From Antechinus flavipes (Eukaryota): a DNA stretch of 64,000 bases. Below, piece by piece: positions 19,240 through 26,700 of this stretch. Numbering within the stretch: position 1 is the first letter of the stretch; each line of letters opens with the position of its first letter. The notes under the pieces are model-generated. The model made no database searches and was not told the origin of the DNA. It worked only from the letters and a program-made list of their open reading frames with translations. Location of the stretch: assembly GCF_016432865.1 (NCBI RefSeq), contig NC_067401.1, positions 474,486,001 to 474,550,000 on the forward strand, in the 5' to 3' direction. The position numbers and the translations under genes are program-made.

Positions 19240-19760
19240 AGGCACGTGTCAACCGCCCCGCCCAGGCCCCGCCCCCAGACGAGACCGCGCCTCCGGATCA
19301 GGCCCCGCCCCATAAGGCCACAGCCCCGCCTTCATAACCAGCCCCGCCTCCGGACATGGGCGGACCAGATCCCGCCCCTCAAGGCCCCAGCCCCGCCTTC
19401 AGGCCAGCTCCGTTTTCGGGCCAGGCCCCGCCCCTTAAGGCCCCAGTCCCGCCTCCGGGCCAGGCCCTGCCCCCAGGCTGCCCCGCGAGGCCGCGGCTTT
19501 CTGTGCCTTTAAGCCGCGAGGCCGCAGGCTCCGCCCATATCCGTCAGGCTTCACTTCCTTCGCTGTGAAGAAGCGGGGAGACTGCGAGGAGGGTACGAAG
19601 CCGAGGAGGCTGCCCGCTCGCCCGCGCTCCAGCCATGGGCCCTCCGCTAGCGCTCCTGGGCTGCTGCTGCTGCTGCCTGCTGCTCCTCGTCGCCTCCGCC
19701 TCGGCATCGGAAGGGCTCGGAAAGGGTCAGACTGCCCGTCCCCCAAAGCTGCTCCCCCTG
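19240..19760 (+). promoter_or_regulatory. TXNDC12: CpG-island promoter of TXNDC12 with a GC-box array
   Basis: Ten CCGCC cores in 19253-19455, CpG-dense, directly upstream of ATG 19635. Confidence 0.88.
19635..19725 (+). CDS. TXNDC12: TXNDC12 exon 1, signal peptide MGPPLALLGCCCCCLLLLVASASASEGLGK(G)
   Basis: gccATGG Kozak, hydrophobic signal peptide, GLGKG motif as in recalled ERp18, G|GTCAGA donor in phase 1 matching exon 2. Confidence 0.92.
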
Positions 19761-20800: not shown

Positions 20801-21871
20801 GCGCTTCACCTTCAAAACAGAATGTAGGAATCCTTGCCATCTTGACCTGGATGGCATTTGGTGAAGTCTCTGAGGACATAGGATCCTTTAGGGCACTTTG
20901 CCAGTGACCTCAGTTGGGTAACCTCTGGGCAGCAGGCTTCTCTGCAGGTTAAAGATGGGCATGAAATGGCATAGGATCTCAGCAGCTGGGAAAACACTGC
21001 TTCCGCCTAGGGCTGGACAAGCCCAGGAAAGAAACGAGCAGAACCGACAGCCCGACTGGGGCCTGGCTGGGGCTGCCACGTGAAAGGGGGAGAGGGTCTG
21101 ATCTTTTAGAGCTTGAAGAGACCTTGGAAGTCATCCGTGTAACTCTGGGGGAGAGAGGCCAGTAGCTTTAATTGAGGTTTTTCTCAGGGTCAGGAAGGAT
21201 CAAAAGAGATAGAATAATTATGTATAAGTTACTCTTAAAAATAAAAGGAATAACATATTTATGGTGAGGACATGATGGAAGTTTTACTTTCCTCATTTTA
21301 ATAATAGCTGACTTTCATATGGGTACCCCAAAGCCTTAGTTTGAAACCAGTTTTAATCTTGGTTTTAAAGTTTAATGACAGAGAAAACTCAATCAATACC
21401 CATTTCATAAAGTACCTGCTGTGTGCCAGGTACTGAGATTATACAGACAGAAGGGAAACAATCCTACTTGACCAGCCATCCTGGGGACCACCGTGGGTGA
21501 CTCAGAGAAGATTGCTGTGTGTGAGCCTGCTCTGCTCGTATCCCTAAGGGAATCTTCAGCATGAAAGCAGAAAGGGACCAGCTGGGCACAGTCATAAGAT
21601 CTCTGAGCAGGCCTCTAGTCCATCTTGTCCCTGAATAAGTTTCCTCTACAAGTGGGCATTCATCCCTTTTCAAGACCTCCAGGAGCGGGGAGTCCGTTCC
21701 AGTCTGGGAGAGCTGTGAGCCCTTATCTAATATCCTTGTCTATGAAGGGACAACACAATCTGCCTACTTGAAGACAATAGGGAATCACGTGGCACTTTAT
21801 GATTGTGTTATCAGCCTCCTGCTGGCTTTTCATGATAGAAAAACTTATTTTAGGTCTTTGTTTTTTTTCAG

Positions 21872-21932
21872 GTTTTGGGGATCACATTCACTGGAGAACA
21901 CTAGAAGATGGAAAGAAAGAGGCAGCTGCCAG
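21872..21932 (+). CDS. TXNDC12: TXNDC12 exon 2, (G)FGDHIHWRTLEDGKKEAAA(S)
   Basis: Matches ERp18; ttttcag / GTAGGG; 61 nt. Confidence 0.98.
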
Positions 21933-25129: not shown

Positions 25130-25414
25130 AGTGGGTTTACAGACACCGAGGCGTGGGCTCCCTAAATTGTAGCCTCCTCGTCAGGCGGAATGGAGTCCCC
25201 TTTTGATCTGCCCGCTTTTGTGCCCTCCTGACCCCTTTTTGCTCACGTGAGAGGCACGTGACTATCTTGTCCGCTCCCCCTCCTGCTACCATAGCAACCG
25301 GGTCTTGGCCAGTTTCCTGTCTTTCTTCCGCCCGTCCTCCTGAGTTGTGCGCTGATTGGCTGGGGGTATAGGACGGAAGTGTAAGTCCGCCCCGGAAGTG
25401 GTTCTCGGATAATC
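25130..25414 (+). promoter_or_regulatory. KTI12: KTI12 internal CpG-island promoter
   Basis: CACGTG at 25244 and 25255, X-box-like GCTACCATAGCAAC 25285-25298, reverse CCAAT (gattggc) ~25354, ETS CGGAAGT at 25374 and 25393. Confidence 0.85.
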
Positions 25415-26476
25415 ATGCCGCTGGTGGTGCTGTGTGGGCTGCCGGATAGCGGCCGGAGTCAGCGAGCCGACGAGCTCCGGAGGGCGTTAGAGGCTGAGGG
25501 TCGGCCCGTGACTGTCGTGCGCGATGCCGACGTGCTTGGGCCCGGCGGGCCGGAGGCTCTGTGCGGGGCCTACTCGGACCCGGCCCGCGAGAAGGCACTG
25601 CGCGCGGCTCTCAAAGCCTTGGTGGAGCGCGACCTGGGCCGCCGGGCTGTGGTCCTCCTCGACTCGCCCAATTACATCAAAGGCTTCCGCTACGAGCTCT
25701 ACTGCCTGGCCCGGGCGGCGCGCACCCCGCTCTGCCTGCTGTACTGCCTGAAGCCCCGGCCGCGGGCGCCGGGCGACGGGGAAGACTGCCTGCCGAAGGC
25801 CGGGGCTGTAGCCAGCAGCTGGAGACCGAAGGCCGCGACCTCGGAGCCGGAGCAGGGTCTGCCAGCGGGAGACGCCCCTGAGGATCACGACCCTCAGTGG
25901 AGAGGTTTGGAGGAAGATCCCGAATCAAGACTAGAGGGAGCCCCGAGTTCAAGGGAACAAAACATTGGGAGTCCGGGGGACGAAGCGGCAGGGGAGCTAG
26001 AGCCAGAGCCGGACCTCGGCTTCCCCCCGGAGCTCCTGGACGCCCTGGCCCAGCGCTTCGAGGCCCCGGATTCCCGCAATCGCTGGGACCGGCCCCTGTT
26101 CACGGTGTTGGGGCTCGAGGAGCCTCTGCCCCTGGCCCAGATCCGGGCGGCCCTCTTCGAGAGCCAGGTGCTCGCCCCGCATCAGGCCACGCAGTCCCAG
26201 CCGCTGGCTTCCACCAACTTCCTGCACCAGCTGGATCAGGTCACCAGCCAGGTCCTGACAGCACTGATGGAGGCCCAGAAGAGCGCCGTCCCCGGGGACC
26301 TGCTGTCGCTGCCCGGGACCACGGAGCGGCTGCGCTTCAGCCGCCCGCTGTCCATGGCCGAGCTGAGCCGGCTCCGGCGCCAGTTCATCTCCTACACCAA
26401 GCTGCACCCCAGCCAGGAGAACCTGCCGCAGCTGGCCAACATGTTCCTGCAGTACCTGGGCCAGAGCTTGCACTGA
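25415..26476 (+). CDS. KTI12: KTI12 homolog, Elongator-associated PSTK-like P-loop protein, intronless, 353 aa, nested in TXNDC12 intron 2
   Basis: MPLVVLCGLP start, LDSPNYIKGFRYELYCLARAARTPLCL, FEAPDSRNRWDRPLF and ELSRLRRQFISYTK...NMFLQYLGQSLH motifs; same nesting as recalled for human. Confidence 0.98.
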   Translation: MPLVVLCGLPDSGRSQRADELRRALEAEGRPVTVVRDADVLGPGGPEALCGAYSDPAREKALRAALKALVERDLGRRAVVLLDSPNYIKGFRYELYCLARAARTPLCLLYCLKPRPRAPGDGEDCLPKAGAVASSWRPKAATSEPEQGLPAGDAPEDHDPQWRGLEEDPESRLEGAPSSREQNIGSPGDEAAGELEPEPDLGFPPELLDALAQRFEAPDSRNRWDRPLFTVLGLEEPLPLAQIRAALFESQVLAPHQATQSQPLASTNFLHQLDQVTSQVLTALMEAQKSAVPGDLLSLPGTTERLRFSRPLSMAELSRLRRQFISYTKLHPSQENLPQLANMFLQYLGQSLH

Positions 26477-26694
26477 GGCTCCCCCCACCTCTGTCCTCAC
26501 TCCAGGTGCGGGCCAGTTTGGCTCTGGGACAAGTTCTGGGATGCATGTTCTTTCAGAGGGAGCACTTGTCTTTTTGGAAGTGGTGAGATTTGTGGACCCT
26601 GAACTCCCCTTCTCAGGCTGGAGGCAGAAGGAAAACCCAAAACCAACAAGAACCTGTGAAACAACAGAATTGTGTTTTCCAGTCTATGTGCTGC

Positions 26695-26700
26695 AATAAA
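26695..26700 (+). terminator. KTI12: KTI12 polyadenylation signal AATAAA
   Basis: 218 nt after the stop, followed by a G/U- and U-rich tract. Confidence 0.8.

What the first reader, a model, noticed from the sequence alone, without database searches (positions are those of the whole stretch)
25436..25459. KTI12 Walker-A lysine is replaced by arginine (GLPDSGRS, K14R)
Seen: the P-loop reads G-L-P-D-S-G-R-S and residue 14 is CGG (25454-25456) in an otherwise intact 353-aa ORF with promoter and polyA signal. Known: KTI12 is a PSTK-like tRNA-dependent ATPase needed for Elongator wobble-uridine modification. Human and yeast have GKS/GKT here, and K14 is reported to matter for function. Walker-A K-to-R changes in other ATPases often keep nucleotide binding but cripple hydrolysis. 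CGG is two substitutions from AAA/AAG, so a single base-call error cannot explain it, and a later synonymous AGG>CGG step would suggest Arg has been tolerated for some time. Inference: this lineage may have a hydrolysis-poor or scaffold-type KTI12, or compensating changes in Elongator.
Basis: partly seen in the sequence, partly recalled or inferred. Interest (0 to 1): 0.72.

Follow-up and report, generated by a model that had tools for sequence, protein, structure and literature searches.

The report
Marsupial KTI12 has arginine Walker-A
The KTI12 gene here really has arginine where the ATP-binding lysine normally sits, but the change is shared by every marsupial sampled, recurs in several placental mammals, and sits in a gene still under purifying selection, so it looks like an old, tolerated variant rather than a defect of this one species.

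Summary
Observation confirmed. The ORF at 25415-26476 (+) is a full-length KTI12. Its P-loop reads GLPDSGRS and codon 14 is CGG.

It is not specific to this lineage. All 12 marsupial KTI12 entries found (10 genera, American and Australasian) read GLPDSGRS. Arg14 also arose at least 6 more times in placentals, with codon AGG in Otolemur and a squirrel-like contig and CGG in a bat-like contig and Sorex. In contrast, 121 of 121 fish, shark, lungfish, coelacanth and amphibian KTI12 keep Lys14.

The gene lies at its ancestral place inside TXNDC12. dN/dS is about 0.14 in both domains. Residues 1-41 are 96% identical across marsupial genera.

Mammalian KTI12 is very GC-rich (GC3 0.85-0.90 in marsupials), has replaced about half its lysines with arginine, and carries a disordered linker about 75 aa longer than in other vertebrates.

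Most likely reading: a functional KTI12 with a deviant Walker A, fixed in the marsupial stem, probably with help from GC-biased substitution. Published work shows fungal Kti12 with K14L still functions at 1 mM ATP. A hydrolysis-poor KTI12 is not excluded; only biochemistry can tell.

The window species also has a unique L85P in the DSLN motif.

The parts
25415..26476 (+). Intronless KTI12 ORF, 353 aa plus stop
   Evidence: Pfam PF08433 E 5.8e-82; 93% identical to Sarcophilus KTI12
25436..25459 (+). Walker-A / P-loop, GLPDSGRS (residues 8-15)
   Evidence: aligned to GLPSSGKT of 6QP0 and GLPGVGKS of PSTK
25454..25456 (+). Codon 14, CGG = Arg in place of the Walker-A Lys
   Evidence: the same CGG in Sarcophilus and Dromiciops
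25445..25447 (+). Codon 11, GAT = Asp. Marsupial-wide; Cys in 117/118 non-amniotes; Tyr/Ser/Cys/Gly in placentals; Asp elsewhere only in Otolemur, also together with Arg14
25520..25531 (+). Codons 36-39, R-D-A-D. The conserved Asp37 (Asp in 105 of 118 non-amniotes, Glu in the other 13; Asp in 90 of 91 placentals; PSTK D41 / Kti12 D45 equivalent, inferred) is flanked by marsupial-only Arg36 and Asp39
   Evidence: PSTK alignment; end of strand beta2 in the model
25661..25672 (+). Walker-B-like D-S-P-N (the DxTN motif, DSLN in other KTI12). Asp83 and Asn86 are kept. Codon 85 (25667-25669) is CCC = Pro in this window only
   Evidence: 1 of 116 proteins; CTC in Sarcophilus and Dromiciops
25751..26020 (+). 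Long linker (about residues 113-202), fast-evolving, predicted disordered. It holds the conserved Trp of 'SWRP'
   Evidence: pLDDT below 50 for 116-197 of the Dromiciops model
26021..26473 (+). C-terminal PSTK-like tRNA-binding domain with the invariant RFEAPDSRNRWDRPLF block
26695..26700 (+). AATAAA polyadenylation signal
   Evidence: Read; function not tested
25244..25400 (+). CpG-rich, TATA-less promoter-like stretch (two CACGTG, one ATTGG, two GGAAGTG sites)
   Evidence: Read; motif level only
21871..21930 (+). TXNDC12 exon (20 of 20 aa identical to the TXNDC12 part of P0109). It shows that KTI12 lies inside TXNDC12, as in other mammals
   Evidence: the same nesting at orthologous loci

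Best explanation
This is the orthologous, expressed-type KTI12 gene of a dasyurid marsupial. KTI12 is the PSTK-like, tRNA-dependent ATPase that supports Elongator's wobble-uridine modification. Its Walker-A lysine was replaced by arginine (AAG > AGG > CGG) in the marsupial stem lineage, together with Asp11, Arg36 and Asp39 around the ATP site, and the change has been kept ever since under purifying selection. Arg14 keeps the long aliphatic chain and the positive charge that contact the beta/gamma phosphates. I therefore infer that the protein still binds and hydrolyses ATP at cellular ATP levels, perhaps with lower affinity or rate. Fixation was probably helped by GC-biased substitution in an extremely GC-rich gene. 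It may also have been helped by a constraint on Lys14 that is weaker in long-linker mammalian KTI12 than in other vertebrates. Shown: the sequence state, its distribution, the selection signal and the synteny. Inferred: retained activity, the GC-bias mechanism and any role for the linker.
For: Identity and fold: Pfam KTI12 E 5.8e-82. PDB sequence hits are CtKti12 and PSTK. An AlphaFold model of the Dromiciops orthologue has a confident NTD and CTD, and its best fold matches are 6QP0 and PSTK.

Distribution: 12/12 marsupial entries read GLPDSGRS, and the marsupials form one clade with support 100. At least 7 K/R changes are needed on the tree. Codon 14 is CGG in three marsupials, a bat-like contig and Sorex; AGG in Otolemur and a squirrel-like contig; AAG in Nycticebus. 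All 121 non-amniote vertebrates keep Lys14.

Selection: dN/dS between the window and Dromiciops is 0.14 for the NTD and 0.14 for the CTD. Residues 1-41 are 95.6% identical among 10 marsupial genera, against 88% among 12 placental orders. G8, P10, G13, S15, D37, D83 and N86 are kept.

Orthology: a TXNDC12 exon lies upstream on the same strand, with the same nesting in other mammals.

GC pressure: GC3 is 0.85-0.90 in marsupials. K/(K+R) is 0.21 in mammals against 0.49 in amphibians and fish. Of 7 marsupial-derived replacements at conserved sites, 5 are of AT-to-GC type. All 5 Otolemur differences in codons 1-33 are AT-to-GC.

Precedent: natural K14L/I Kti12 in Eurotiomycetes, which also have long linkers, hydrolyse ATP at 1 mM and rescue yeast kti12 deletion (PMC7363723).
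Against: No activity was measured. In many P-loop ATPases a Walker-A K-to-R change keeps binding but abolishes hydrolysis (PMC6254361, citing Rad3 K48R). K14A kills CtKti12 ATPase and yeast function (PMC6511879).

Strict conservation of Lys14 in 121 non-amniotes shows the residue is not generally replaceable. Purifying selection on the NTD would also be expected for an ATP-binding-only protein.

The GC-bias argument is circumstantial. The squirrel-like contig with Arg14 has GC3 of only 0.60, and the overall Otolemur/Nycticebus differences are balanced (27 AT-to-GC against 21 GC-to-AT).

Didelphid codons could not be fetched, so sharing of CGG is shown only within Australidelphia.
Confidence: 0.65

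Rival explanations
1. Hydrolysis-poor or ATP-binding-only KTI12. Arg14 lets marsupial KTI12 bind ATP and tRNA but hydrolyse slowly or not at all. The protein would then act as a nucleotide-bound scaffold or switch for Elongator, with compensation elsewhere.
For: Walker-A K-to-R often gives mutants that bind but do not hydrolyse (PMC6254361). K14A abolishes Kti12 ATPase. Pfam's generic AAA_33 model falls below its cut-off on the window protein (24.5 bits against a cut-off of 27), and the precomputed Pfam hits list AAA_33 for none of the other marsupial proteins but for most placental ones.
Against: K14L and K14V Kti12 keep wild-type rates at 1 mM ATP, and Arg is chemically closer to Lys than Leu is. 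All other ATP-site residues remain conserved and the region is under strong constraint. Arg14 arose 7 times, which fits a mild effect better than a loss of catalysis in an enzyme whose ATPase is required in yeast.
Confidence: 0.2
2. Co-adapted, re-wired ATP site. Asp11, Arg14, Arg36 and Asp39 form a marsupial-specific charge network that resets ATP affinity or regulation. On this view the change is adaptive rather than nearly neutral.
For: All four residues are fixed in 10 of 10 marsupial genera and absent as a set elsewhere. Asp11 was seen only with Arg14, in two independent lineages (marsupials and Otolemur), and in none of about 200 Lys14 sequences. In the model, residue 36 ends strand beta2 next to the conserved Asp37. 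In CtKti12, K14A is partly rescued by D129A, which shows that charge coupling exists in this site.
Against: Five other Arg14 lineages lack Asp11, Arg36 and Asp39. Positions 11, 36 and 39 are variable in placentals. Distances could not be measured because the tools give no coordinates. Y11D and K14R are both AT-to-GC changes, so GC bias alone could explain why they occur together.
Confidence: 0.12
3. Artefact or dead copy: an assembly or base-call error, a pseudogene, or a processed retrocopy, with the real Lys-bearing gene lying elsewhere.
For: KTI12 is intronless, so a retrocopy would look the same. The Sarcophilus assembly has a frameshift pair in this gene.
Against: Ten marsupial genera from independent assemblies share Arg14, and three share CGG. 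The ORF is intact with dN/dS 0.14-0.25. It lies at the ancestral TXNDC12-nested locus. Runs X1-X4 hold 87-100% of sampled words. No Lys-bearing marsupial protein was among the best 120 of 790 hits; the nearest candidate, P0013, is placental (84% identical to Saimiri).
Confidence: 0.03

Closest known systems
Canonical KTI12 / Kti12 (human, S. cerevisiae, Chaetomium thermophilum; PDB 6QP0)
   Same: Full-length Pfam KTI12 match. The same N-terminal P-loop kinase fold and C-terminal PSTK-like domain. Conserved G8, P10, G13, S15, D37, D83, N86 and the RFEAPDSRNRWDRPLF block. The same genomic nesting in TXNDC12 as in placentals.
   Different: The Walker-A Lys14 is Arg, and Asp11, Arg36 and Asp39 are marsupial-specific. 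Mammalian proteins carry about 75 more linker residues than fish or amphibian KTI12. The window species also has Pro85 in the DSLN motif.
Eurotiomycetes Kti12 with K14L/I and an elongated linker (Krutyholowa et al. 2020, PMC7363723)
   Same: Natural, clade-wide loss of the Walker-A lysine in an otherwise conserved Kti12, occurring together with a long linker, while Elongator genes remain.
   Different: The replacement is Arg (charged) rather than Leu/Ile. In mammals the long linker is universal, while Arg14 is fixed only in marsupials and is scattered among placentals. Activity has been measured for the fungal variant but not here.
[quoted passage not shown]
   Same: The same two-domain architecture and the same P-loop layout GxPxxGK(S/T). 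Sequence and fold matches appear.
   Different: PSTK is a paralogous family that transfers phosphate to Ser-tRNASec. K17A is inactive in PSTK (PMC2275090), and no Arg variant is described there.
Engineered Walker-A K-to-R mutants (e.g. yeast Rad3 K48R, Msh2/Msh6 K-to-R)
   Same: The same residue change at the same motif position.
   Different: Those are laboratory mutants, usually hydrolysis-defective. Here the change is natural, tens of millions of years old, and kept under purifying selection.

Membership tests
KTI12 (Pfam PF08433) | Full-length match to the KTI12 profile above the curated cut-off | tested here: met
   275.7 bits against a cut-off of 22; residues 1-348 on profile positions 1-270 of 271
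KTI12 (Pfam PF08433) | N-terminal P-loop kinase fold like CtKti12/PSTK, plus a C-terminal PSTK-like domain | tested here: met
   Sequence hits to 6QP0 and PSTK. The model of the Dromiciops orthologue matches 6QP0 (TM 0.72 by target) and PSTK best. The window protein itself was not folded.
KTI12 (Pfam PF08433) | Canonical Walker A, GxxxxGK[ST] | tested here: not met
   GLPDSGRS: Arg14, codon CGG. The glycines and Ser15 are kept.
KTI12 (Pfam PF08433) | Walker-B-like Asp in the D-S-L-N (DxTN) motif, and the conserved Asp after strand beta2 | tested here: met
   D83, N86 and D37 are present. The middle residue is Pro85 in the window only (1 of 116).
KTI12 (Pfam PF08433) | Orthologous locus (nested in TXNDC12 in mammals) | tested here: met
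   TXNDC12 exon at 21871-21930 (+). A Thioredoxin_7 gene spans the KTI12 loci of Sarcophilus, Dromiciops, Otolemur, Nycticebus and Sorex.
KTI12 (Pfam PF08433) | tRNA-dependent ATPase activity needed for Elongator U34 modification | not testable with these tools
   Needs biochemistry or genetics. Only purifying selection speaks for retained function.
Deviant-Walker-A Kti12 of Eurotiomycetes (PMC7363723) | Leu or Ile at position 14 | tested here: not met
   Arg14
Deviant-Walker-A Kti12 of Eurotiomycetes (PMC7363723) | Elongated flexible linker between the ATPase and tRNA-binding domains | tested here: met
   The NYIKG-to-RFExP segment has a median of 119 aa in mammals against 44 in non-amniotes. 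pLDDT is below 50 for residues 116-197.
Deviant-Walker-A Kti12 of Eurotiomycetes (PMC7363723) | Fungal (Eurotiomycetes) descent | tested here: not met
   Mammalian orthologue. Any likeness is convergent.

The most novel reading that the evidence does not exclude
Once KTI12 acquired its long disordered linker in the mammalian (or amniote) stem, the Walker-A lysine stopped being indispensable. This would parallel the long-linker K14L Kti12 of Eurotiomycetes. Marsupials then fixed a re-wired ATP site (Asp11, Arg14, Arg36, Asp39) with altered ATP affinity. That would make Elongator-dependent wobble-uridine modification respond differently to cellular ATP across a whole mammalian infraclass.
Probability: 0.2. 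Interest if true: 0.65.

Novelty: new variant of a known kind. Interest (0 to 1): 0.45.

Why it matters
KTI12's ATPase is held to be essential for Elongator's tRNA wobble-uridine modification, and its Walker-A lysine was called invariable until a Leu variant was found in one fungal class. This finding adds a second natural class of deviant site: Arg14 fixed in all marsupials sampled and arising repeatedly in placentals, against strict Lys conservation in 121 other vertebrates.

The deviant site comes with ready-made natural controls, for example Otolemur against Nycticebus, and marsupial against placental. It allows a direct test of whether Kti12 needs fast ATP hydrolysis or mainly nucleotide binding. 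It is also a clean example of how GC-biased substitution may push a catalytic residue across a nearly neutral boundary. For annotation, marsupial KTI12 should not be flagged as defective on this residue alone.

Tried and rejected
Read laying. Alignments A1 and A3, the PDB profile search, the structure job and the fold search leave out the window protein. The local tblastn used only the flanks 1-25400 and 26500-64000. DNA alignment used 25990-26180. The whole ORF was used only inside local scripts for codon counts and trees.

Orthologue DNA. No DNA came back for Monodelphis, Vombatus, Petaurus, Gracilinanus or Trichosurus ('file too large'). Didelphid codons are therefore unknown and no clade-wide codon model was run.

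A Lys-bearing marsupial paralogue. P0013, the best non-marsupial hit with Lys14, turned out to be placental (84% identical to Saimiri). P0108 groups with rodents.

Tree artefact. The tree's joining of Sorex and P0024 to marsupials is taken as a composition artefact, because all of these are very GC- and GARP-rich. It is not taken as kinship.

Sauropsids and monotremes. None appeared in the best 120 of either word search. I did not use the big representative search.

Side-chain geometry. Distances among Asp11, Arg14, Arg36 and Asp39 cannot be measured because the model's coordinates are not given.

Papers and earlier notes. No paper holds both KTI12 and K14R, or KTI12 with bird gene loss. Earlier-findings look-ups by place and by 'KTI12' gave nothing.

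Possible human or ape sequences. Some Logan-derived proteins next to Saimiri in the tree (e.g. P0048, P0076) may be human or ape. I fetched no contig for them and searched no further for them.

Full report
**What is in the window.** One search shows ATG at 25415. Codons 8-15 (25436-25459) read GGG CTG CCG GAT AGC GGC CGG AGT, that is G-L-P-D-S-G-R-S, with codon 14 = CGG at 25454-25456. One search lists one uninterrupted ORF at 25415-26476 (+), 353 aa. Pfam's KTI12 model covers residues 1-348 (E 5.8e-82, 275.7 bits against a cut-off of 22). The only solved relatives by sequence are Chaetomium thermophilum Kti12 (6QP0) and archaeal PSTK. Their P-loops, GLPSSGKT and GLPGVGKS, align column for column with GLPDSGRS. 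An AATAAA lies at 26695-26700. The upstream region carries motif-level signs of a CpG-island promoter, which were not tested.

**It is the orthologue, not a retrocopy.** KTI12 has no introns, so a processed copy had to be excluded. A TXNDC12 exon (20 of 20 residues identical to the TXNDC12 part of the fused entry P0109) lies at 21871-21930 on the same strand. At the KTI12 loci of Sarcophilus, Dromiciops, Otolemur, Nycticebus and Sorex, a Thioredoxin_7 gene spans KTI12 in the same way.

**Distribution of Arg14.**
- The word search found 790 relatives, and I read the P-loop of the best 120.
- All 12 marsupial entries read GLPDSGRS. They are the window, Sarcophilus, Vombatus x2, Trichosurus, Petaurus, Dromiciops, Notamacropus, Monodelphis x2, Gracilinanus and Macrotis. 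That covers American didelphids as well as four Australasian orders and Microbiotheria.
- In a tree of 111 proteins the marsupials form one clade (support 100), all with Arg. The fewest K/R changes on the tree is 7.
- The other six changes are in placentals: Otolemur, Choloepus, Sorex fumeus, Vulpes, a squirrel-like Logan contig (P0033) and a bat-like Logan contig (P0087, a cluster of 18 sequences).
- A second search from a caecilian query gave 121 non-amniote vertebrate KTI12 (sharks, rays, chimaera, ray-finned fishes, coelacanth, lungfish, amphibians). All 121 have Lys14.
- Lys is therefore ancestral and strictly kept outside mammals. Arg14 was fixed once before the marsupial radiation and has arisen repeatedly in placentals.
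- By general knowledge of mammalian dates, that puts the marsupial change at roughly 80-160 million years ago.

**Codons.** Codon 14 differs by lineage:

| Codon 14 | Lineages |
|---|---|
| CGG | window, Sarcophilus, Dromiciops, bat-like contig, Sorex |
| AGG | Otolemur, squirrel-like contig |
| AAG | Nycticebus (sister of Otolemur) |

The second step to CGG happened at least three times.

**Is the gene still under selection?**
- Nei-Gojobori dN/dS between the window and Dromiciops is 0.14 for the ATPase domain (residues 1-115), 0.14 for the C-terminal domain and 0.25 for the linker. Otolemur against Nycticebus gives 0.13 and 0.11 for the two domains.
- Residues 1-41, which hold the deviant P-loop, are 95.6% identical among 10 marsupial genera, against 88% among 12 Lys-bearing placental orders.
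- G8, P10, G13, S15, D37, D83, N86 and the RFEAPDSRNRWDRPLF block are kept.
- An AlphaFold model of the Dromiciops orthologue was built from an alignment that leaves out the window protein. It has a confident NTD (strand 3-7, P-loop, helix from residue 14, strands 32-36, 79-83 and 106-111) and a confident CTD. Residues 116-197 have pLDDT below 50.
- Its best fold matches are 6QP0 and PSTK.

**Context of the change.**
- Mammalian KTI12 is unusual among vertebrates. Non-amniote proteins are about 275 aa and 70-80% identical from caecilian to shark. Mammalian proteins are about 350 aa and only about 41% identical to the caecilian, on a stem branch of 1.76 changes per column.
- The extra length is two insertions around a conserved Trp ('SWRP') in the linker.
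- Composition has shifted strongly. K/(K+R) is 0.21 in mammals against 0.49 in amphibians and fish. The GARP residue fraction is 0.34-0.38 against 0.21. GC3 of the marsupial genes is 0.85-0.90.
- AAG > AGG > CGG are both AT-to-GC steps.
- Marsupials have seven derived replacements at sites conserved in both the outgroup and placentals: K14R, V48A, S56P, I81L, A252V, P254A and S258A. Five of the seven are of AT-to-GC type. Placentals have one such replacement.
- In Otolemur all five nucleotide differences from Nycticebus in codons 1-33 (F6V, Y11D, K14R, Y33C) are AT-to-GC, although the gene-wide counts are balanced at 27 against 21.
- This fits GC-biased substitution (biased gene conversion or mutation pressure) carrying a mildly deleterious or neutral K-to-R change to fixation. 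It is circumstantial: the squirrel-like Arg14 contig has GC3 of only 0.60.

**Other marsupial-specific residues near the site.** Asp11 replaces Cys in 117 of 118 non-amniotes and Tyr/Ser/Cys/Gly in placentals. Arg36 and Asp39 flank the conserved Asp37 (VVRDADV against VVDDAAV). All three are fixed in 10 of 10 marsupial genera. Asp11 was otherwise seen only in Otolemur, again together with Arg14. A coupled charge network is possible but could not be measured, and five Arg14 lineages lack these partners.

**What the literature says.**
- In CtKti12, K14, T15, T16, D129 and R171 contact the alpha and beta phosphates. K14A abolishes ATPase, and in yeast it abolishes U34 modification (PMC6511879).
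- In PSTK, K17A is inactive (PMC2275090).
- The same group later found a natural K14L/I in Eurotiomycetes, always together with an elongated linker. K14L lowers MANT-ATP affinity from 1.5 to 25 uM, but K14L and K14V hydrolyse ATP like wild type at 1 mM, and K14L rescues kti12-deleted yeast. They argue that the aliphatic chain seals the pocket (PMC7363723).
- That paper calls the lysine 'previously thought to be invariable' and does not mention Arg or marsupials. No paper in the library holds both KTI12 and K14R.
- Engineered K-to-R changes in other Walker-A ATPases often bind but do not hydrolyse ATP (PMC6254361).

**Reading.** The most likely account (0.65) is a functional KTI12 with a tolerated deviant Walker A, old and marsupial-wide, reached by GC-biased substitution where the constraint on Lys14 is weaker than in other vertebrates. 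A hydrolysis-poor, binding-only KTI12 (0.2) cannot be excluded without an assay. A co-adapted site (0.12) is the more novel variant. Artefact or dead copy (0.03) is nearly excluded. The parallel between long linkers and loss of the lysine in fungi and mammals is a correlation from two clades only.

**Limits.**
I kept those letters away from all search tools afterwards and worked beside them.
- Support from runs is indirect. X1-X4 of 'organism A' hold 87-100% of 141 sampled words of 25300-26700, and runs on record as RNA from a relative hold part of it.
- DNA of five marsupials could not be fetched.
- Monotremes and sauropsids were not seen.

**Earlier scan note.** Note s1-184844 (unchecked) reports that ELP5 was replaced by a retrogene in this genome. 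It adds context on Elongator genes but did not change my reading.

Noticed in passing
window 25667-25669 (codon 85): The window species alone has Pro (CCC) in the middle of the Walker-B-like DSLN (DxTN) motif. 115 other KTI12 have Leu, Val, Met or Ile there, and Sarcophilus and Dromiciops have CTC. It may be a real species-specific change next to Asp83, a polymorphism or an error. It is also an AT-to-GC change.
   Followed up: partly
L001:1585-1790 (Sarcophilus, GCA_048593225.1): The devil's KTI12 has a 1-base deletion in a C run and a 1-base insertion in a G run 122 nt later. This throws about 40 codons of the invariant RFEAPDSRNRWDRPLF block out of frame, and NCBI flags the protein as LOW QUALITY. 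It looks like homopolymer assembly error rather than a real lesion.
   Followed up: partly
Word searches: No bird, reptile or monotreme KTI12 appeared among the best 120 hits of either a marsupial or a caecilian query, although fishes and sharks are 70-77% identical to the caecilian. Sauropsid KTI12 may be very divergent, unannotated or missing from GC-rich regions of assemblies.
   Followed up: no
Tree: Sorex fumeus and the shrew-like P0024 are drawn as sisters of marsupials with high support, against mammalian phylogeny. All of these are very GC- and GARP-rich, so this is probably convergent composition.
   Followed up: no
P0011 (Macrotis), alignment A3 columns 120-150: The bilby KTI12 entry (312 aa) lacks the linker segment that holds the otherwise nearly invariant Trp of 'SWRP'. 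It is either a real deletion or an annotation gap.
   Followed up: no
window 19689-19727 and 21871-21930 (+): TXNDC12 exons lie upstream of KTI12: the second is a 20/20 aa match and the first is a weak match. KTI12 sits in a TXNDC12 intron on the same strand.
   Followed up: partly
L003 against L004, codons 1-33: Otolemur differs from Nycticebus by F6V, Y11D, K14R and Y33C within 100 bp, all AT-to-GC. It ends with the same GLPDSGRS P-loop as marsupials, a striking convergence.
   Followed up: partly
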